DNA of 64,000 bases, taken from positions 281,370 through 345,369 of IMG/VR virus record IMGVR_UViG_3300027708_000012. The stretch is one strand, 5' to 3'. The position numbers and the translations under genes were made by a program. The notes below the pieces were generated by a model that saw only the letters and a list, made by a program, of their open reading frames with translations, made no database searches and had not been told where the DNA came from. The number at the start of each line of letters is the position of its first letter. Within the stretch, counting starts at the first letter, position 1. Below, piece after piece: positions 41,741 through 50,194 of the stretch.

Positions 41741-42130
41741 TTACTTTTTAAAAAACACTATGTTTTTACCAGGATCTTGAGTATTGAACACAGCATACCT
41801 CTGATCCATTAGCTCATCCAATCCGCTGATGTAGGGTACTAGATGAAAATCTTGTTTTAAACAGCCCACGGCATCTCCATCTGATTCGTATAAACTGTCT
41901 CTGTCTGTGGTAAAGTCAAACCGCCAAAGACGGATAAGTTCATCTGTGTCAAATCCTGCCAAGTTACCTTTGGTTTCTACAACTACAGGAGTTTGAGTGT
42001 AAGTAACATTAGCACGAATACCCAGGGTCTGTAAAACAGTTTGAAAGTTTTGTTCTTTCCAACGCTCAATGTCAGTTGTGGGTCTTTTAGTGTGTGTGAT
42101 ATCCACCAGTGTGTACAGTTTATAGTTCAT
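41741..42130 (-). CDS. Conserved phage hypothetical protein
   Basis: YTLVDIT...QNFQTVLQTLGIRAN...W.FDF...VPYISGLDE. Confidence 0.75.
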   Translation of the reverse strand: MNYKLYTLVDITHTKRPTTDIERWKEQNFQTVLQTLGIRANVTYTQTPVVVETKGNLAGFDTDELIRLWRFDFTTDRDSLYESDGDAVGCLKQDFHLVPYISGLDELMDQRYAVFNTQDPGKNIVFFKK

Positions 42131-42366
42131 TGCTTCAACAACTTTCGAGTTAAATCAATAACATCCTGTACTGTAGTAATATGTTCGTGACTGTCAGCTG
42201 GATAAACAACATTAAACCTATCTTCCAATACAATCAGCAATTCCAGTGCATCCAGACTTTCAACTCCTAGGTCGTCCTTGAGATGTTTATCTACAGTAAC
42301 TGATTCAGATTTCAATCTTAGCTCGTCGGCTAATATATTGATGACTTGTTGTGTAATATCTTTCAT
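42127..42366 (-). CDS. acpP: Acyl carrier protein
   Basis: DDLGVESLDALELLIVLEDRF...ITTVQDVID; attachment Ser present. Confidence 0.85.
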   Translation of the reverse strand: MKDITQQVINILADELRLKSESVTVDKHLKDDLGVESLDALELLIVLEDRFNVVYPADSHEHITTVQDVIDLTRKLLKQ

Positions 42367-43142
42367 GTTTTTCTATAATTTAGTAAAAGTGAATCGTCGT
42401 GGTCGTTGGGGTGAAAATCTTTTTTATAATAATCAAAATATCGGTTGGTATTTTCTCTAATCATGCCATTTTTAGCAAACAAAAATTGCCAAGCATCCTT
42501 TACAGTGGACCATTTGAAAAGTTGTCGATCTGCATGTAAAAATTGAATTGTTGTTTTACCAACTGACCACCAATATAATATTGTAGCAAATACCATGACC
42601 CATTGTCTAGTAGTTTCTTTACCACTTATGCTACGCCATAGGTCAAAACACACAGATTTGTGTTCTACTTCTTCTACACTGTGCCAGCGCCATATGTGTT
42701 CAAAATGTGGATGCATGCGTTTCATAAAAGTGCGTTTGCGTAAATTATAACCACCTGTCAATGCTGTAATGTGTTCCAAGCCAACAGTAATTGCTAAATT
42801 AGTTTCTGGGCTAAACTTTTTTTGTAACCAGTTCATTCTGTTGAGGTGTTCCTGTGCAGCCTGTTTGGCTGGTAAGCCTTGTTGTTGTAACCATTCATTA
42901 TATTGTTTATGAGCGTAGCCGTGCCAATTTTCTTGTTTGATAAATTCATTTAGTTGAGATGTTAATTCAGAACTGGTCACAGAATCCCTAAACGGTCTAG
43001 TACTATCAATAAAGTATTTTTCACCTTCAGGGAAGATAGCACTCATGGCATTGAGGAAATGAGTGCGAAATGGGTTATTATCGCACCAGTAGCGTGGCAG
43101 GTCTTGTGACCAATCTTGTTTTAATTGATAGCTTTGGAACAT
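42363..43142 (-). CDS. Ferritin-like di-metal protein (annotated family: predicted metal-dependent hydrolase)
   Basis: FPEGEKYFI, QENWH..H, LEHITA, WHSVEEVEHKSVCFD, FHPNDHD. Confidence 0.85.
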   Translation of the reverse strand: MFQSYQLKQDWSQDLPRYWCDNNPFRTHFLNAMSAIFPEGEKYFIDSTRPFRDSVTSSELTSQLNEFIKQENWHGYAHKQYNEWLQQQGLPAKQAAQEHLNRMNWLQKKFSPETNLAITVGLEHITALTGGYNLRKRTFMKRMHPHFEHIWRWHSVEEVEHKSVCFDLWRSISGKETTRQWVMVFATILYWWSVGKTTIQFLHADRQLFKWSTVKDAWQFLFAKNGMIRENTNRYFDYYKKDFHPNDHDDSLLLNYRKT

Positions 43143-43157
43143 ACAATATTTATAGAT

Positions 43158-43183
43158 AAAAAAAGGACCTTGCGGTCCTTTTT
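43158..43183. terminator. Terminator (bidirectional-looking)
   Basis: AAAAAAGGACC-TTGC-GGTCCTTTTT. Confidence 0.8.
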
Positions 43184-43197
43184 ATTTATGGAACTGT

Positions 43198-44742
43198 TTA
43201 AGCCCCTGAGTATCCGCCGTGGTATGGATTGTACAAATACTTGTTAGGCGCACCTAATAGTGCTGTACTATTGCTCCATGCATTAGTACTATTATTTGGA
43301 TTATACACTTGACTAGTTTTAGCCTGTGTTGTAATCCAAGTTTTAACTTGTGTAGGTGTTGCTGTGGGGTTGCCTTGCAAGTATAAAGCAGCTACGCCAG
43401 TAACTTGCGGAGTTGCCATACTAGTACCGGCAATTTTGCAAGCCTTGAATGTTGTTTGTTGTTGTGTGCCAAACACATACTGGAATGGACTAAAACTACT
43501 TTGATTGCTAGTACTACTTGTAATGTCAGTGCCTGGACTGATAATATTGCAACCTGGACCGCGCTCGCTGTAGTAGGCCAGTTGCTCTAAGTAACTACTT
43601 CCATTTTTAACAGTTGCACTATCGCTAGCACTTACACGGATTGTACCACTAGGACTTCCGCCTCTATGATAATATATAGGAGTGTTGGCTGGAGCAATAG
43701 CACCTGAAAAACTATGTGTATAATAGTTGTTGTAATCTGCGCCACCACTCACATCAATTTTATGACCATAGTTGCCAGCTGCTGCTATGTAGACAATACC
43801 AGCTGTTTGACCTTGAGCAATGCGTGTTTCAGTTGCTGGATCGCTAATGCAATGTTCAAACCCTACCATTCCTTTGCTGGGCAAATACTGTGTACCGCTA
43901 GCGTAATTGGTAGTTGTGCCTTCATAAACAATCTTATTGATAGTTTTTTGATTTGGACGATTTGCATTATCGCTGTAATACCAAACATATCCCCAACTCA
44001 TGTTAACAATAGTTGGACGATGATTGCCTGTGGCTATTTTTCTTAAATGCCAAGCACGGAGAATATCAAATGCTGCATAAGTATCAAAACTCTTAGTACC
44101 ACCTGGTGAATTGTCAAATATGCGCAGACTATAGATGTAAGCACCTTTTGCGGCACCGTAGGTTGTGCCAGCGGCTATGCCAGCCACATGTGTACCATGT
44201 TCGCCTTCACCGTAATTGCTGTAATCATAGTAACCAACTGGCATAGTGCCCGATAGTCCAGCTTCTGTGTACCAATTGATTTCTTTTAGTCTTGAACCAA
44301 ACTCTGGATGTCCTGATTGCACACCATCATCCATGATAACAATGTCAACACCAGTACCGTCACGAGAGGCTGCATAAGTTGTGCCCACTGTGCTTTCAGT
44401 AGTGTTAAGTGTTGCTCGGCGCAAGCCCCAATTTACATTATACAAGTCTGGATTAGTAGCACGACGGGAAAAATTGCCAGCTGTGTTATTATAAGCACGG
44501 GGAGTTTCTGTTACATCTGATACAGTATGTGGACGAGCAGCACTGGCAGGTAATTTATAGTGTATGTGTGCCACACGAGGATCAGTTGCTAGTTTGGCAG
44601 CTTCCTCGTCGGTCAACATGTAATGGTAAGTAAGTTCGTTTAAAGGAACTAGATCTGCAATTTCAGTGCCATTGGCCACTAGTTCAGCATGCAAACTATC
44701 TATATCTGCTTCGCTATGTGCGACAATGACACATTCTTTCAT
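43198..44742 (-). CDS. Subtilisin-like S8 serine protease
   Basis: IMDDG, HGTHVAG, AAAGN, GTSMATPQV; N-terminal propeptide-like region. Confidence 0.92.
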   Translation of the reverse strand: MKECVIVAHSEADIDSLHAELVANGTEIADLVPLNELTYHYMLTDEEAAKLATDPRVAHIHYKLPASAARPHTVSDVTETPRAYNNTAGNFSRRATNPDLYNVNWGLRRATLNTTESTVGTTYAASRDGTGVDIVIMDDGVQSGHPEFGSRLKEINWYTEAGLSGTMPVGYYDYSNYGEGEHGTHVAGIAAGTTYGAAKGAYIYSLRIFDNSPGGTKSFDTYAAFDILRAWHLRKIATGNHRPTIVNMSWGYVWYYSDNANRPNQKTINKIVYEGTTTNYASGTQYLPSKGMVGFEHCISDPATETRIAQGQTAGIVYIAAAGNYGHKIDVSGGADYNNYYTHSFSGAIAPANTPIYYHRGGSPSGTIRVSASDSATVKNGSSYLEQLAYYSERGPGCNIISPGTDITSSTSNQSSFSPFQYVFGTQQQTTFKACKIAGTSMATPQVTGVAALYLQGNPTATPTQVKTWITTQAKTSQVYNPNNSTNAWSNSTALLGAPNKYLYNPYHGGYSGA

Positions 44743-44936
44743 TATTTTTTTCCGTGGCGTGCTTCTACTTTAGCCTGTGTTTCTGCACTCATGGGTTTTA
44801 CTTTGACAAGCTGTTTGCCTTCCAAACCCATTTCTGATCGGATAGCTGCAGATTTTTCTTTCATTGAGTCTATTTTGGCCTGAGCGTTAGCACGGACCAG
44901 TGTAACTTTGCTTGGTGAAAATTGTGTGTTAGCCAT
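44742..44936 (-). CDS. Small basic protein
   Basis: MANTQFSPSKV...; AAGGA RBS; stop overlaps protease start. Confidence 0.65.
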   Translation of the reverse strand: MANTQFSPSKVTLVRANAQAKIDSMKEKSAAIRSEMGLEGKQLVKVKPMSAETQAKVEARHGKK

Positions 44937-44946
44937 TATTTTTCCT

Positions 44947-45735
44947 TTATAAGCTATTTGGATTAGCAAGACTCCAACCTGGGTCTCCTGCTAGTGGGCC
45001 TGGAAGGAATCCCCAACCTAAGTCTTGGCATTCCGCTATACTCCAGCCGTCGCCGTTGCCGCCCCAACCGCCTAGAGCTTCCATAGCATCGTATAATGCA
45101 CTGGCCAAGTCTGTTGGAATAGAATTCTCGTCAGCATCGTGTCCTTGTTCTGGCTCATCATAACCTTGCTCGTCATAGTCGCTAGTAGTGAGTTCATCGC
45201 TGATGGCAAATACAAAGTTACCAAAGTTATTTGTATAAGCCTCATGATCATAGTATGTTGGTGCTCCAAGATAGTACACTTCAGCTACTTTTTGTATAGC
45301 ACGAACTATGTATGAATAAAAACTATCTGCATCGTTGAATCCAGCACGGATAATATTTCCGCCAGTCACAGGCTCGCCGTCTTGAAACCAATCAACAGTT
45401 ACGCTGCTTGTTGTAGCGGCCACAACAGTAAACTCACCGTTGTATCGATAATAGTCCATGTCGTAAACATAGATAGTATCGCCAACTGCATAAGGAGCTT
45501 GAGCTTGTTCAGCAAACTCATAAGTTACTTGTCGACCATCAGCTGTACCGCCTGTGACTGCAATATTATCTTGATCGAAATAATAGTTATTAGAATATAA
45601 ATTATAATAGATACTAAAAGTAAAAAACTTTAATTTTCTAGTACCAAACAAACTGCTTGGTGCGGCTCGTTGTGTGTTAACAGCAACTTCTCTTGCGTTG
45701 CTGGGATTGTATAAATTACCTGCGTATTGTGGCAT
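44947..45735 (-). CDS. Paralog 5 of tandem FGTR-family putative virion proteins, with inserted beta domain
   Basis: PSSLFGTRKLKFF...SYIVRAIQKVAEVYYLG. Confidence 0.8.
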   Translation of the reverse strand: MPQYAGNLYNPSNAREVAVNTQRAAPSSLFGTRKLKFFTFSIYYNLYSNNYYFDQDNIAVTGGTADGRQVTYEFAEQAQAPYAVGDTIYVYDMDYYRYNGEFTVVAATTSSVTVDWFQDGEPVTGGNIIRAGFNDADSFYSYIVRAIQKVAEVYYLGAPTYYDHEAYTNNFGNFVFAISDELTTSDYDEQGYDEPEQGHDADENSIPTDLASALYDAMEALGGWGGNGDGWSIAECQDLGWGFLPGPLAGDPGWSLANPNSL

Positions 45736-45744
45736 GATTGATCC

Positions 45745-46629
45745 TTAAAAAGTTAAACCAAAACTAGGGTTTAGTCGCCATATGTATAGGCTGCTAGTAG
45801 AAAGTTCATTGTCTGTTAATACTTTTGCCACAGCTTGTACAAAGTTATACGGATAGTTACAGCTTTGAATTCTGCCGTCGCCGCAATAGCATAATGAATC
45901 TCCAGCTACACCCGAAAAGTCAACATCACCAAAGAATCCGTTACCTTCTGGAAGGAATGGTTCAGCATCATCTGCTACGGCAAATGTAAAACAGTCATAA
46001 CCAAGATCAACATACACATAACCGATTGAGGTACCGCCATCATACACTGTGGTAGTAGCTGTGCTGTTAAACTTCACATAAGTTGTTGTACATTCTGTAA
46101 CAAAGTGTTGGTCATAAAGATTGCAATTGTAACCATTTCCAACATCGGCCACACGCACTGGATCACCAACATTGAATGGCGGCGTTGGTTGTTCTACAAA
46201 TTCTAGTTTGGCAATGGTGCCGTCGCCTGTAGCTCTAGAAACATATATATTCTCACTAAAATATGTTGGCTTAAAAGCATACCAAGGACTTGCTTGATTC
46301 AATGGGCTGGTTGCTGAGTTTTGTGGTTCGCCCACATAGAACAATTCTGCTCCTCCGCCACCGCCTCCGCGGATATCGCCGTTGCCTTCTGTAGGAGCAT
46401 CAATACCCCCTATCATACCACCTTGCTGAATAGCACGAACCATTTGATAGTACAAACTGTTGCTGTCTTGCCAGTTAGCGGCAAGGCCGTAGTCTTGTTC
46501 TATATGTAAACTGTAAAATGCTAGTTTTCTTGTACCGAAGTTTGAACTTGCGGCTGTTCTGCGGTAGTTAAGGGCGGTTATGTTGTTACTGCTACCTTGT
46601 GTGATTTGATCACCTGCATATTTTGGCAT
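45745..46629 (-). CDS. Paralog 4 of tandem FGTR family, with inserted beta domain
   Basis: Start MPKYAG at 46629; LNYRR..SNFGTRKLAF...MVRAIQ...AELFYVG. Confidence 0.8.
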   Translation of the reverse strand: MPKYAGDQITQGSSNNITALNYRRTAASSNFGTRKLAFYSLHIEQDYGLAANWQDSNSLYYQMVRAIQQGGMIGGIDAPTEGNGDIRGGGGGGAELFYVGEPQNSATSPLNQASPWYAFKPTYFSENIYVSRATGDGTIAKLEFVEQPTPPFNVGDPVRVADVGNGYNCNLYDQHFVTECTTTYVKFNSTATTTVYDGGTSIGYVYVDLGYDCFTFAVADDAEPFLPEGNGFFGDVDFSGVAGDSLCYCGDGRIQSCNYPYNFVQAVAKVLTDNELSTSSLYIWRLNPSFGLTF

Positions 46630-46718
46630 TAATTTCTCCCGAATGCGTTTCAAGTATTTATGTGTTCCAGTCAACAAAAAAGGATCCTCAGATCCTTTAG
46701 TGTTCAGTCCCGTAAGGA

Positions 46719-47276
46719 TTAAGAATTGTAAAATGCTTTCAAGTTTGGATCTGGGTTGATGGGTGAATTCTCAACATATTCAAACTTGGTGTAGTACTCT
46801 TGGTAGTCAGAATCAGTAGTCCAACCATAGTCGCCGCTGACTGCTGGATTTTCTCCCAAGCCGCCCAGCAAGTACACTTCTTGCACACTAATGTCATCAC
46901 CATCCACACCAGCTAGAGCTTCTCTTAGAGCATCTTGTAGTGTGGTGGCTTTGGCATTGTAGCCGCTGCCTGGATTGCTTTCGTCCAACGCAAGATTGTT
47001 GCCGTCGTTGAATGTGTCTTCAAACACGCCCACTGTGATACGACCATGATTGTAACCCACATGTGGAGCACCAATGATGGCAATTTCAGCACGAGTTTGA
47101 ATGGTGTCGATCACTGTGTTCAGTGTTGACATAACAATATCGCTAGAGTTTGACTGGGCACTGAAGCGAATTTGTCCAATGTTGAACCATACTACTTTGC
47201 GTGAGCCAAAACGGCTGTATGGCACTTGTTGTGTGCGGTAATTGGCCGCTACACTTGTTCCGATTAATGATGGCAT
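46719..47276 (-). CDS. Paralog 3 of tandem FGTR family
   Basis: VAANYR..SRFGSRKVVWF...TIQTRAEIAIIG. Confidence 0.8.
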   Translation of the reverse strand: MPSLIGTSVAANYRTQQVPYSRFGSRKVVWFNIGQIRFSAQSNSSDIVMSTLNTVIDTIQTRAEIAIIGAPHVGYNHGRITVGVFEDTFNDGNNLALDESNPGSGYNAKATTLQDALREALAGVDGDDISVQEVYLLGGLGENPAVSGDYGWTTDSDYQEYYTKFEYVENSPINPDPNLKAFYNS

Positions 47277-47364
47277 AATAATCTCCTGTATATGCTGTTT
47301 ATATAGTATTTAGTTCAGCCAACAAAAAAGGATCCTAAGATCCTTTTTGTAGAAGCTATACTGA

Positions 47365-47889
47365 TTAATCAGTGAATAGTTCGTTTTCGTATGAGCTTTC
47401 GCCTTGATAGCTATAAGAACCATCAATTTGAATACTTTGTGGGTTAACATAGTTGATAGCACGGTTCCACTCAGCAAATCCGTTGCCGTATAATACAGCA
47501 AGATCTACGTCAGCATTGTCAACACCTAAACTGGCGTTTACTGATTGACCTAATGTACGAGCAAACGCATTTGCATATGCATAATCTTCGTCACGATTTG
47601 GATCGCTGATGTTACCGTCATTCATTGTGTCAGCATAAACACCAATCATAAATGCGCCATCACTTGGGCTACCAATAATTACTACTTCTGCTTGAGCTTG
47701 GATACCACGAACTGCCTTGGCAAAATTGCTGTTTGGCGCATTAGCGTTGAGTGCAAGATCAACACCGTTAACGTGTACTTTCAAGAATTGGATTTGTCTT
47801 GTAGCTAGGCGTGTTGTTGGTGCAACACGTAGATAGTTAGCTACCACTGTTGGATTGTTTGCGATTTGATCGCCGTTGTATTGTCCCAT
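47365..47889 (-). CDS. Paralog 2 of tandem FGTR family
   Basis: VVANYLR..TRLATRQIQF...AVRGIQAQAEVVIIG. Confidence 0.8.
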   Translation of the reverse strand: MGQYNGDQIANNPTVVANYLRVAPTTRLATRQIQFLKVHVNGVDLALNANAPNSNFAKAVRGIQAQAEVVIIGSPSDGAFMIGVYADTMNDGNISDPNRDEDYAYANAFARTLGQSVNASLGVDNADVDLAVLYGNGFAEWNRAINYVNPQSIQIDGSYSYQGESSYENELFTD

Positions 47890-47997
47890 ATTGTTCTCCT
47901 AATAGGTAATCACGCTCTGTGATTGTTGTATTGTATTTATACCAGCCAACAAAAAAGGGCTACAAGAGCCCTAGTTTGCTTCCCATCCCTTTGAGAA

Positions 47998-48576
47998 TTA
48001 ATACTCGTAACCTGGTTGTACAAGTGCTGTACCAATTGGGAATGTTGGCTGTACTGTAACACCGCTATCACCAGTTGCATCGATAACTGCCTGTTGAATT
48101 GTACGGGCATTGCCATTGGCCATGCTAGCGTGTTGCTCATCAGCGTTCATGCTGCCTGCTGTGTCAACATAGATACCTACGATAAACTTGGCTTTTTGGT
48201 TGGTACCAGCTGAGCCTGTAAAAGCAACTTTACCAACAAAGCAAACTTCAGCTGCCAATTGAACGCCGCTTACTGCTTTGTAAATTGCACTGTTTGTTTT
48301 GAAGATTTCACTTTCTGGAATTACAACATTGCCAGAAGCATCCATGATTTCGTATGTTTCACCAGTTCCGCCTGTATTGTTGTTATCGCTAACATCAACA
48401 TAGCCTTCTGCGGTGTTTGTATTTGTTGATAGGTTCTCAACAGCTAAGAAAGCAATTTGGCGTGTGCCAAAATTGCTGAATGGGCTCATTGCACGACGAT
48501 AGTTGGCTGCAACACCTGTAGCTGCTGTGCCGCCGTCTCCGGCTTGTCCGATTAAATTACCTGAATACTGTGCCAT
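47998..48576 (-). CDS. Paralog 1 of tandem FGTR family
   Basis: VAANYRR..SNFGTRQIAF...AVSGVQLAAEVCFVG. Confidence 0.8.
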   Translation of the reverse strand: MAQYSGNLIGQAGDGGTAATGVAANYRRAMSPFSNFGTRQIAFLAVENLSTNTNTAEGYVDVSDNNNTGGTGETYEIMDASGNVVIPESEIFKTNSAIYKAVSGVQLAAEVCFVGKVAFTGSAGTNQKAKFIVGIYVDTAGSMNADEQHASMANGNARTIQQAVIDATGDSGVTVQPTFPIGTALVQPGYEY

Positions 48577-48663
48577 AATTGTTCTCCTCTATATGGTATC
48601 AACCACGCTCTGTGGTCTTGGTAATGTATTTAGCTCGAAGGCCAAAATGTCCAGAGTATAGCG

Positions 48664-48921
48664 TTATATTTGATTCTTAGATTCTTGAATACGTTTGATT
48701 CCACGTTTAAACTTATTGATATCATTGGCTTTAATACTGTTGATAAAACGGCGTTCAAGTTCTGCGGCTGTTTCAATATCGTAGTTTTCACGTATCATGT
48801 CTAATAAGTTAATAGCACTTTGTATAATATTGGAACCACGGCTTTCGATGACAAGTTCAGTGTCCCGACTAAGTCCAATATCGTTTAATTCTTGTAATAT
48901 ACTACGGGTGCTTTTACGCAT
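48664..48921 (-). CDS. Conserved phage hypothetical protein
   Basis: MRKSTRSILQEL...IESRGSNIIQSAINL...ELERRFINSIK. Confidence 0.75.
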   Translation of the reverse strand: MRKSTRSILQELNDIGLSRDTELVIESRGSNIIQSAINLLDMIRENYDIETAAELERRFINSIKANDINKFKRGIKRIQESKNQI

Positions 48922-49618: not shown

Positions 49619-50194
49619 ATGAAACTAGTGTATATACACGGCGCCAATGCCACCAGCGAAAGCTTCAACTATATCAAGAGTAAACTTGGTACGGGAATAG
49701 ACATTGACTACGACAGCCGCAATGGGTTTGAAAACAACCTAAAAGACATGCAGGCTGTGTTGCAAGATCATAAAGATCTAGTATTCGTTGCACACAGTTT
49801 GGGCGGTATATACGCATTGCATTTGGCCAATACTATGCCAGCCGCAATTAAGGGTGCTGTAACATTAAGCACTCCGTATGGTGGCGCTGAAGTAGCAGAT
49901 TATGCTCAATACTTTTTGCCATTCAGCAGACTGATGCGTGACATTGGTCCTAGCTCGTGGGTAATGAAGCAGGCGAGCCGTATCAAGATACAGCATCCGT
50001 GGACTAACATTGTTACTGTGAAAGGGCAAAGTCCTTTTATGCATGAGCCCAACGATGGTGTGGTGACCATTGCCAGTCAAAAGCATCATGCAGATATGGA
50101 ATTAGTAGAAGTGGATTGTAATCACTATGAAGTTGTGCTCAGTGACGTGGTTGTTAAACTTATTAAAGAAAGAGTAAACAAGTTTAAGAAATAA
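49619..50194 (+). CDS. Alpha/beta hydrolase (lipase/esterase)
   Basis: YIHGAN, AHSLGG nucleophile elbow, NDGVV, NH. Confidence 0.9.
   Translation: MKLVYIHGANATSESFNYIKSKLGTGIDIDYDSRNGFENNLKDMQAVLQDHKDLVFVAHSLGGIYALHLANTMPAAIKGAVTLSTPYGGAEVADYAQYFLPFSRLMRDIGPSSWVMKQASRIKIQHPWTNIVTVKGQSPFMHEPNDGVVTIASQKHHADMELVEVDCNHYEVVLSDVVVKLIKERVNKFKK

What the first reader, a model, noticed from the sequence alone, without database searches (positions are those of the whole stretch)
44947..48635. Array of five divergent paralogs built as terminator-promoter cassettes
Seen: all share (A/L)NYxR..S.FG(T/S)R(K/Q)..F and V..IQ..AE...G motifs; four have their own TAAATA promoter and three junctions repeat hairpin-TTTTTTGTTGRC-TAAATAC. 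Paralogs 4 and 5 carry a similar beta domain (EF.EQ...P(F/Y).VGD...V.D....YN) inserted at different loops of the scaffold. Inference: an expandable display system, e.g. capsid decoration or filament subunits with swappable surface domains, with junction repeats promoting gain and loss.
Basis: partly seen in the sequence, partly recalled or inferred. Interest (0 to 1): 0.75.

Follow-up and report, generated by a model that had tools for sequence, protein, structure and literature searches.

The report
Swappable late-gene cassettes in jumbo phage
A freshwater jumbo phage carries five old, diverged copies of an uncharacterised small protein, each packaged as a terminator-plus-late-promoter cassette, and related phages have gained, lost, fused or interrupted copies at the repeated junctions; what the proteins do is still not shown.

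Summary
Five minus-strand genes (P1-P5, 174-294 aa) share a conserved N-terminal arm of about 45 residues and a ferredoxin-like core. Three junctions repeat a hairpin, TTTTTTGTTGRC and a TAAATA box. P4 and P5 carry a similar beta-barrel in different loops.

The window is the end of a 345-kb freshwater jumbo phage that encodes a homologue of the T4 late sigma factor gp55. ATAAATA is its most enriched 7-mer upstream of genes.

The family is large, with more than 600 metagenomic proteins, and has no Pfam or PHROG assignment and no source name other than "hypothetical protein". Related phages carry 1, 4, 5 or 6 copies. One close pair differs by exactly one cassette, with the crossover inside the junction repeat. 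One relative has a P2::P3 fusion, and three have a Pirin gene inserted at a junction.

The closest known mechanism is the PeSL regulatory cassette of T4-type phages, here in a late-promoter form.

Function is inferred, not shown. The array lies in a tail-fibre gene neighbourhood. The barrel resembles the endosialidase and E1-FCCH barrels. Some P5 orthologues end in a Peptidase_S74 chaperone domain, which marks trimeric fibres and spikes. I therefore favour virion-surface, fibre-associated proteins that present variable domains (about 0.45). Capsid decoration, packaged internal proteins and non-virion roles are not excluded.

The parts
48664..48921 (-). 85-aa gene directly upstream of the array (phrog_11854, 'virion structural protein'). 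The same small gene precedes the family gene in most related loci.
   Evidence: PHROG E 2e-15. Homologues in PA5oct-, Serratia BF- and Yersinia fHe-Yen9-04-type jumbo phages are annotated as virion structural. Adjacency in relatives.
48627..48632 (-). TAAATA box (cTAAATAc) of P1, a late-promoter candidate
   Evidence: Sequence. It lies 50 nt before the ATG. ATAAATA is the most enriched upstream 7-mer in the genome, 43 observed against 2.5 expected. A gp55 homologue is present.
48601..48617 (-). 5'-leader stem-loop of P1 (6 bp, AGAGC loop)
   Evidence: Folding. Across 21 leaders of P1-type, P2-type and single-copy genes, 4 of 6 pairs show compensatory changes.
47998..48576 (-). P1, 192 aa. Scaffold with a short insert in the beta1-alpha1 loop.
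   Evidence: Orthologues at 60-82% identity.
47981..47989 (-). GGGATGGGA element just after the P1 stop codon, function unknown
   Evidence: Two copies in the genome. Present once per locus, always just after the stop of one family member, in 10 of 12 related loci.
47945..47972 (-). Junction 1: terminator hairpin (47956-47972) plus the TTTTTTGTTGGC box (47945-47956)
47934..47941 (-). TATAAATA box of P2
47908..47924 (-). 5'-leader stem-loop of P2
47365..47889 (-). P2, 174 aa, the minimal scaffold
   Evidence: AlphaFold pLDDT 74.8, with the core at residues 30-140. Orthologues at 52-67% identity; closer metagenomic relatives up to 91%.
47318..47348 (-). Junction 2: terminator hairpin (47325-47348) plus the TTTTTTGTTGGC box (47318-47329)
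   Evidence: (z -4.5).
47307..47312 (-). TAAATA box (cTAAATAc) of P3
46719..47276 (-). P3, 185 aa
46670..46698 (-). Junction 3: terminator hairpin (46679-46698) plus the TTTTTTGTTGAC box (46670-46681)
   Evidence: (z -3.3).
46655..46661 (-). ATAAATA box of P4. P4, P5, orf64 and the S8 protease gene follow with no terminator detected between them.
45745..46629 (-). P4, 294 aa. Scaffold with a Gly-rich loop, a beta domain in the beta2-beta3 loop (about 46015-46254) and a Cys-containing C-terminal part.
44947..45735 (-). P5, 262 aa. Scaffold with a beta-barrel (residues 57-133, about 45337-45567) in the beta1-alpha1 loop.
   Evidence: AlphaFold pLDDT 71, barrel above 85. Barrel matches: E1 FCCH Z 8.5, phage FCWL1 chain Z 8.2, phi92 endosialidase Z 7.5. 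Orthologues in L013 and P0031 add Peptidase_S74.
44742..44936 (-). 64-aa basic ORF that closes the array in every multi-copy relative (64-72 aa)
43198..44742 (-). Subtilisin-like S8 protease gene, start overlapping the orf64 stop. It is a neighbour; membership in the system is not shown.
   Evidence: PF00082 E 6e-32. Present after the array in the window clade but absent from the 6-copy locus L043.

Best explanation
Shown: the region is an array of five ancient paralogues of an uncharacterised jumbo-phage protein family. Each protein has a conserved, probably extended N-terminal arm of about 45 residues and a small ferredoxin-like core that accepts extra domains in several loops. P1, P2 and P3 are separate units, each bounded by an intrinsic-terminator hairpin, an invariant TTTTTTGTTG box and a T4-type late promoter box. 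P4 has its own box and is followed by P5, orf64 and the protease gene without a detected terminator. The repeated junctions, and also the conserved first codons, have served as sites where relatives lost, fused or interrupted cassettes. This is a late-gene counterpart of PeSL cassette shuffling.

Inferred: the proteins are made late and in quantity. They are virion-surface proteins of the tail-fibre apparatus that dock through the shared N-terminal arm and present different outer domains. P5, and possibly the others, would be trimeric.
For: Architecture:
- Paralogy is shown.
- Terminators and boxes are shown.
- All 19 junctions from 8 loci keep a hairpin (-8.5 to -12.1 kcal/mol, stems changed by compensatory pairs), an invariant TTTTTTGTTG, and a TAAATA box 8-15 nt after it. 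The same design occurs in the further arrays L042 and L043.

Late transcription:
- ATAAATA is 17-fold enriched upstream of genes.
- A gp55 homologue is present (E 1.5e-6).
- Exact fragments of all five genes occur in four lake metatranscriptome runs.

Recombination:
- L013 and L015 are 96% and 93% identical on the two flanks, and L013 lacks about 600 bp, which is the whole P3 cassette. The two alignments overlap by 27 nt on the junction repeat.
- The L022 gene has the P2 leader and first 12 codons joined to a P3 body.
- A Pirin gene sits between the promoter and the P3 leader in L009, L021 and L017.
- Copy number is 1, 4, 5 or 6.

Surface and fibre reading:
- Tail-fibre and virion PHROG hits and a Laminin_G_3 protein lie just upstream.
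- Pectate-lyase-type tailspike genes lie near the family gene in L031-L034 and L042.
- Salicola phage SCTP-2 shows synteny: large genes 17-15 (unannotated there, in the position of the window's fibre genes), then gp14, then an exonuclease.
- The P5 barrel resembles the endosialidase and FCCH barrels.
- Peptidase_S74 scores above the Pfam cut-off on two P5 orthologues (25.6 and 26.2 bits against 22). This domain is the trimerising intramolecular chaperone of fibres and spikes (PMC4690869, PMC3742443).
Against: - There is no proteomic, structural or genetic evidence that any member is in a virion. No cultured phage with a clear homologue was found.
- The window's own P5 lacks the S74 domain. The close pair L013 and L015 differ in having it, so it is dispensable.
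- The core fold is generic, with best PDB Z of 7.
- The barrel matches have Z 7.5-8.5, near the level the tool calls common.
- The RNA-library fragments could be carried-over DNA, and one contig bridges the P1-P2 terminator.
- Tree backbone support is weak.
Confidence: 0.5

Rival explanations
1. Capsid decoration proteins. The N-terminal arm binds the capsid lattice, as the N-arms of known decoration proteins do, and the paralogues occupy different quasi-equivalent sites on a very large head.
For: The proteins are small, late and individually promoted, which suits high and tuned copy numbers. The most conserved part is a predicted extended N-terminal arm. The adjacent 85-aa gene falls in a PHROG classed as 'head and packaging'.
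Against: The gene neighbourhood is fibre and spike genes, not head genes. An S74 chaperone on P5 orthologues is a fibre and spike feature. There is no similarity to any known decoration family in Pfam, PHROGs, PDB or BFVD. Relatives manage with one copy.
Confidence: 0.15
2. Packaged internal or ejected proteins, like the T4 internal proteins. The conserved N-terminus would be a capsid-targeting or processing signal, perhaps cut by the neighbouring S8 protease, and the variable bodies would act in the host.
For: The genetic layout resembles the T-even IP loci: variable late genes with a shared 5' end and PeSL-like junctions (PMC2839356, citing Repoila 1994). A protease gene is co-transcribed downstream.
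Against: The shared part is a 45-residue arm plus a whole common fold, not a 10-residue tag. The N-terminal consensus has no conserved Glu of the kind at which T4-type prohead proteases cut (the cleavage rule is my own knowledge). Single-copy phages and the 6-copy locus L043 keep the N-terminal motif without an adjacent S8 gene. An S74 domain and a lectin-like barrel would be odd on an internal protein.
Confidence: 0.12
3. Non-virion late proteins, for example assembly chaperones or adaptors for the neighbouring fibre genes, or proteins that act on the host envelope at the end of infection.
For: Small genes after fibre genes are often chaperones (own knowledge). No virion evidence exists. The neighbours include enzymes: S8 protease, PF10118, an ACP-like gene, and Pirin in relatives.
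Against: Five to six conserved paralogues with grafted barrels of up to 498 aa, and a self-cleaving trimerisation domain, are not expected of chaperones. A terminator and promoter for each gene argue for large structural amounts.
Confidence: 0.15
4. The junction repeats are ordinary terminator-promoter pairs kept alike by function alone, and the indels among relatives arose by unrelated illegitimate events.
For: Single-copy loci also have a hairpin, a T-run and a TAAATA box after the gene, without the GTTGRC box. So the general plan is a feature of the locus.
Against: The L013/L015 breakpoint falls exactly in the shared repeat and removes exactly one cassette. The L022 joint falls in the other shared stretch, the first codons. 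TTTTTTGTTG is invariant in 19 of 19 junctions while the stems beside it vary, which fits homogenisation between junctions.
Confidence: 0.08

Closest known systems
PeSL (promoter-early stem-loop) mobile regulatory cassettes of T4-type phages RB49 and phi1 (Arbiol et al. 2010, PMC2839356)
   Same: A composite intergenic repeat made of a terminator stem-loop and a promoter flanks small non-core genes. Recombination between repeats deletes, inserts or replaces the flanked gene between close relatives and leaves a chimeric repeat. This is what L013 against L015 shows.
   Different: The promoter here is the T4-late type (TAAATA box, no -35) rather than a sigma70-like early promoter. The order is hairpin then promoter, with an invariant TTTTTTGTTGRC box. 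The flanked genes are paralogues of one family, not unrelated ORFans. Mini-circles were not tested.
Internal-protein (IP) loci of T-even phages (Repoila et al. 1994, as cited in PMC2839356; T4 head reviews PMC3012670)
   Same: Late genes in variable number share their 5' end and lie next to PeSL-like sequences, and the shared 5' coding sequence can act as a recombination site (compare the L022 fusion).
   Different: IPs share only a capsid-targeting tag of about 10 residues that is cut off after Glu, and their bodies are unrelated. Here the whole scaffold is shared and no such cleavage motif is conserved.
Tail fibres and tailspikes with a C-terminal intramolecular chaperone (Peptidase_S74: K1F endosialidase, T5 pb1; PMC4690869, PMC3742443)
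   Same: Two P5 orthologues end in an S74 domain above the Pfam cut-off. The P5 barrel superposes on the barrel of the phi92 and K1F endosialidases.
   Different: The proteins are tiny, with no triple beta-helix, coiled coil or beta-helix body. The window's P5 has no S74 domain. Trimer formation was not shown.
Multi-receptor-binding-protein sets with a shared N-terminal anchor (for example the CBA120 tailspikes TSP1-4 and the branched fibres of RaK2-like jumbo phages; own knowledge)
   Same: The idea of several paralogous surface proteins with a conserved N-terminal docking part and variable outer parts, encoded side by side.
   Different: There is no sequence or fold relationship, and the anchor here is a 45-residue arm on a ferredoxin-like domain. 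Docking is inferred, not shown.

Membership tests
PeSL-type regulatory cassette | Intergenic repeat combining a terminator stem-loop with a promoter | tested here: met
   Three junctions in the window and 19 of 19 in 8 loci have a hairpin, a T-run and a TAAATA box.
PeSL-type regulatory cassette | The promoter is a strong sigma70-like early promoter (-35, -10 and an upstream AT-rich tract) | tested here: not met
   No sigma70-like site lies at the junctions. The box is the T4-late type, and the genome has a gp55 homologue.
PeSL-type regulatory cassette | Indels between close relatives have breakpoints inside the repeats and leave a chimeric repeat | tested here: met
   L013 against L015: a cassette of about 600 bp is missing, and the 27-nt overlap of the two alignments lies on the repeat.
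PeSL-type regulatory cassette | Excised cassette mini-circles | not testable with these tools
   Needs inverse PCR or raw reads from infected cells.
T4-type internal proteins | Short N-terminal capsid-targeting sequence ending in a prohead-protease site after Glu | tested here: not met
   The consensus of 118 members has no conserved Glu in the first 45 residues. The cleavage rule is my own knowledge.
T4-type internal proteins | Bodies unrelated to each other | tested here: not met
   All five share one profile and fold.
Peptidase_S74 fibre and spike proteins | C-terminal S74 intramolecular chaperone domain | tested here: not met
   Absent from all five window proteins. Present in the P5 orthologues L013:3152-4180 and P0031 (25.6 and 26.2 bits, cut-off 22).
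Peptidase_S74 fibre and spike proteins | Homotrimer | tested here: inconclusive
   The complex prediction of three P2 copies gave no verdict.
E1_FCCH / endosialidase-type beta-barrel | Six-stranded barrel superposable on the FCCH domain | tested here: met
   P5 residues 57-133 match 4p22_B at Z 8.5 and rmsd 2.2 over 73 residues, and 4hiz_A at Z 7.5. This is a predicted model and the Z values are near the tool's 'common' range. There is no Pfam hit.
HMA / ACT / RRM ferredoxin-like domains | Family sequence signature (for example the metal-binding CxxC of HMA) | tested here: not met
   Only the fold is similar, at Z 7 or below. There is no Pfam hit and no conserved Cys pair in the core.
Known head-decoration families (Soc, Hoc, gpD and similar) | Sequence or fold match | tested here: not met
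   No hit in PHROGs, Pfam, PDB or BFVD other than uncharacterised members of this same family.

The most novel reading that the evidence does not exclude
This jumbo-phage lineage has its own modular display system. One small ferredoxin-like scaffold has a universal N-terminal docking arm, tolerates grafted domains in at least three loops, and is encoded in 1-6 cassettes. The cassettes are reshuffled by recombination at a dedicated terminator / TTTTTTGTTGRC / late-promoter junction. The virion would thereby carry a re-combinable set of surface binders that helps set host range or particle attachment.
Probability: 0.3. Interest if true: 0.8.

Novelty: new variant of a known kind. Interest (0 to 1): 0.6.

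Why it matters
It extends cassette shuffling between regulatory repeats, known from early-gene hyperplastic regions of T4-type coliphages, to late genes of uncultured freshwater jumbo phages. A clean natural before-and-after pair shows the crossover.

It also defines a large protein family of more than 600 members that has no annotation. The family has a simple, insertion-tolerant scaffold. If it proves to be a virion-surface docking module, it would explain part of the unassigned protein content of jumbo-phage fibre regions, and it would be a natural template for displaying foreign domains on phage particles.

Tried and rejected
- PHROGs and Pfam gave nothing for P1-P5 or for ten small family members. 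Pfam also gave nothing for the large inserts of relatives.
- tblastn of P1 and of a small member against 50,697 phage records found no match. megablast of the region found none.
- A profile search of Vibrio phage 2.275.O, PA5oct, Yersinia fHe-Yen9-04 and Sinorhizobium Phosso found nothing. Salicola SCTP-2 gp14 matched weakly (E 0.006).
- hhalign against the genes that follow the 84-aa homologue in PA5oct, the Vibrio phage and fHe-Yen9-04 showed no relationship.
- Two look-ups of small members returned only contigs of about 1 kb.
- Complex prediction of three copies of P2 scored 0.16 against a mark of 0.42, which the tool reports as no verdict. It is not used for or against trimers.
- The ESM Atlas, AFDB-cluster and Atlas shape searches gave only generic or sub-0.5 TM matches.
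- The TTG start of P4 at 46677 is rejected. It would overlap the terminator and promoter, and the ATG at 46629 has a GGGAG ribosome-binding site.
- Recent tandem duplication is rejected. Each paralogue has its own orthologues, and the groups differ by about 70%.
- A single common hairpin register for all junction types did not fit one alignment, so each junction was folded separately.


Full report
**What is there.** The window is the last 64 kb of a 345,369-bp IMG/VR virus record that CheckV estimates to be 94% complete. DNA and RNA runs that hold the stretch come from freshwater lakes.

On the minus strand between 44947 and 48576 lie five ORFs: P1 47998-48576 (192 aa), P2 47365-47889 (174 aa), P3 46719-47276 (185 aa), P4 45745-46629 (294 aa) and P5 44947-45735 (262 aa). 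An 85-aa gene (48664-48921, phrog_11854 'virion structural protein') precedes them. A 64-aa ORF, a subtilisin-like S8 protease and a PF10118 protein follow them.

A profile built from 118 family members finds exactly these five genes and nothing else in the genome, with E 1e-14 to 1e-48.

**Cassette anatomy.** Each of the three junctions P1>P2, P2>P3 and P3>P4 has four parts in order:
- a hairpin (two of the three fold far better than shuffles, z -4.5 and -3.3);
- a run of T within the 12-mer TTTTTTGTTGRC;
- a TAAATA box that starts 9-14 nt after the 12-mer;
- a leader with a GGAG ribosome-binding site.

The 12-mer occurs six times in the genome, three of them here. The 13-mer TTTTTGTTGRCTG occurs only here. 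No shuffle of the window reached the observed count. P1 has its own cTAAATAc box. P5 follows P4 after 9 nt without a box.

ATAAATA is the most enriched 7-mer in the 80 nt upstream of genes in this genome, with 43 observed against 2.5 expected. The genome also encodes a homologue of the T4 late sigma factor gp55 (E 1.5e-6). Reading the boxes as T4-type late promoters is therefore reasonable, but it remains an inference.

Exact fragments of all five genes are present in four lake metatranscriptome runs, and none covers 44700-44983. This fits expression in situ. DNA carry-over is not excluded, and one contig crosses the P1-P2 terminator.

**The proteins.** None of the five matches any Pfam or PHROG model.

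AlphaFold with a 118-sequence alignment gives P2 a confident core at residues 30-140. Its order is beta-alpha-beta-beta-alpha-beta-beta, which is ferredoxin-like. The N-terminal 25 residues have low confidence, although this arm is the most conserved part of the family. PDB matches are generic (HMA, RRM and ACT domains, Z 7 or below). The only significant matches among viral models are uncharacterised proteins of uncultured phages, which are family members.

P5 has the same core order, with a well-modelled barrel (residues 57-133) inserted between the first strand and first helix. That barrel superposes on three things:
- the FCCH domain of ubiquitin E1 (Z 8.5);
- a chain of the phage FCWL1 head-to-tail interface structure, 9jlf_E (Z 8.2);
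- the barrel of the phi92 and K1F endosialidases (Z 7.5).

BLAST aligns P5 56-93 with P4 126-163 (E 2e-6), but the scaffold helix is P5 129-160 against P4 49-80. The related barrel therefore sits in a different loop in P4. Other members carry different inserts after the third strand.

**The family and the array in other phages.** A profile search of 1.8 billion cluster representatives finds 213 with E of 1e-3 or better. A second search finds more than 600 proteins, mostly 115-150 aa, and no source gives any of them a name other than "hypothetical protein".

Related contigs show the following:

| Copies | Loci | Arrangement |
|---|---|---|
| 1 | L031-L034 | directly after the 84-aa gene |
| 4 | L013 | P1-P2-P4-P5 |
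| 4 | L022 | P1-P2::P3-P4-P5 |
| 5 | window, L015, L020 | P1-P2-P3-P4-P5 |
| 5 | L009, L021 | five copies plus a Pirin gene between P2 and P3 |
| 5 | L042 | another jumbo contig of about 342 kb |
| 6 | L043 | members up to 498 aa |

Each window paralogue has orthologues at 37-83% identity in these relatives, whereas paralogues differ by about 70%. In a maximum-likelihood tree each of the five groups is recovered, with strong support for P1, P4 and P5 and weaker support for P2 and P3. Small proteins from other phages interleave among them, and the backbone is weak. The copies are therefore old.

**Evidence that the junctions mediate gain and loss.**
1. L013 and L015 are 96% and 93% identical on either side of the missing P3. 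L013 lacks about 600 bp, which is precisely leader, P3 and terminator. The two alignment blocks overlap by 27 nt on the shared hairpin/TTTTTTGTTGGCTG repeat. The L013 junction is the left half of the L015 P2>P3 junction joined to the right half of its P3>P4 junction.
2. In L022 the gene after P1 has the P2-type promoter, leader stem-loop and first 12 codons, followed by a P3-type body. Here the crossover lay in the conserved 5' coding sequence.
3. In L009, L021 and L017 a Pirin-domain gene with its own terminator lies between the junction and the remnant of the P3 leader.
4. In L017 a P3-type gene stands before P2 with a P1-type terminator, and an unrelated 214-aa gene precedes P4.

Across 19 junctions from 8 loci the hairpin is always kept, at -8.5 to -12.1 kcal/mol. 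The stems vary by compensatory changes, while TTTTTTGTTG is invariant. The same junction design recurs in L042 and L043. Single-copy loci have only a generic hairpin, T-run and TAAATA box.

**Comparison with what is known.** The closest described mechanism is the PeSL cassette of T4-type phages. PeSLs are promoter-plus-stem-loop repeats that flank ORFans and recombine to delete, insert or replace them. PeSL-like sequences were noted at the variable internal-protein loci of T-even phages (PMC2839356).

This array shares the composite repeat and the chimeric-junction signature. It fails the sigma70 early-promoter criterion, it uses late-type boxes, and it flanks paralogues of one family.

It is not a T4-type internal-protein locus. 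The shared part is an entire fold plus a 45-residue arm, and no Glu-type processing site is conserved.

**What the proteins do.** This is inferred.

Just upstream lie genes with tail-fibre and virion PHROG hits and a Laminin_G_3 protein. Pectate-lyase-type spike genes lie near the family gene in relatives. In Salicola phage SCTP-2 a weak homologue, gp14, sits between large genes in the fibre-gene position and an exonuclease, as in the window.

The P5 orthologues of L013 and P0031 end in a Peptidase_S74 domain above the Pfam cut-off. This domain is the self-cleaving chaperone that trimerises tail fibres and spikes (PMC4690869, PMC3742443).

Together with the endosialidase-like barrel, this favours small surface proteins of the fibre apparatus that dock by the shared arm and expose variable domains.

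Four points weigh against certainty. The window's P5 lacks S74. The fold matches are modest. No cultured phage with proteomics has a clear homologue. A trimer prediction gave no verdict. Capsid decoration, packaged internal proteins and non-virion roles remain open.

**Verdict.** The functional inference of surface display is plausible and leans towards the tail-fibre module rather than the capsid or a filament, but it is unproven. This is a new late-promoter variant of a known kind of phage cassette shuffling, carrying a large and entirely uncharacterised protein family.

Noticed in passing
window 47981-47989 (-); once each in L009, L013, L015, L020, L021, L022, L031, L032, L042, L043: The element GGGATGGGA(AGC) lies just after the stop codon of exactly one family member per locus, before the terminator. 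It follows P1 here and the single copy elsewhere. It is conserved in loci whose proteins are only 30-40% identical, and it occurs only twice in the 345-kb genome. No explanation.
   Followed up: partly
window 48601-48617 and 47908-47924 (-); 19 further leaders in relatives: A 6-bp stem-loop with an AGAGY or GGAGC loop lies between the TAAATA box and the ribosome-binding site of P1-type, P2-type and single-copy genes. Four of 6 pairs show compensatory changes across 21 sequences. P3 and P4 leaders lack it. It may be an mRNA stability or translation element.
   Followed up: partly
window 46670-46681, 47318-47329, 47945-47956 (-), and all array junctions in relatives: TTTTTTGTTG is invariant in 19 of 19 junctions while the adjacent stems vary. 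The GTTGRC part is more conserved than a terminator tail needs. It is too close to the TAAATA box to be a sigma70 -35 element.
   Followed up: partly
window 42363-44742 (-) and about 42130-42363: The array is followed by an S8 protease and a PF10118 'metal-dependent hydrolase'. In relatives a 77-aa PP-binding (acyl-carrier-like) gene comes next. These accompany the multi-copy arrays and are absent from the single-copy loci L031-L034. The 6-copy locus L043 has PF10118 and the carrier gene but no S8 gene. The protease's nearest phage relatives are in T4-like cyanophages.
   Followed up: partly
L009:8622-9284, L017:1259-1918, L021:3978-4670: A Pirin/cupin-domain gene with its own terminator is inserted between P2 and P3 in three relatives, like a moron. 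It is absent from the window.
   Followed up: partly
L013:3152-4180 versus L015:8996-9763: Two close relatives differ in whether P5 carries the C-terminal Peptidase_S74 chaperone domain. The domain is therefore gained or lost on a short timescale.
   Followed up: partly
window 49619-50194 (+): The divergently oriented 191-aa gene upstream of the array has a GHSLGG-type serine-hydrolase motif. L042 and L043 have a similar 192-aa gene with weak Abhydrolase hits. L009, L011 and L015 have a GNAT acetyltransferase at this position. This is a second variable spot.
   Followed up: no
window 45745-46629 (-), P4: P4 and its orthologues have a run of five to six Gly between the scaffold helix and second strand, and an invariant Cys plus further frequent Cys in the C-terminal third. 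This suggests disulfides or a metal site.
   Followed up: no
G000:C1:105178-105450 (outside the window): A homologue of the T4 late sigma factor gp55 (31% identity over residues 23-115) lies in a 287-aa open frame.
   Followed up: partly
L017:1939-2583: An unrelated 214-aa gene with no Pfam hit occupies the P3 slot in one relative. It has the usual junction after it, which suggests the cassettes can carry foreign genes.
   Followed up: no
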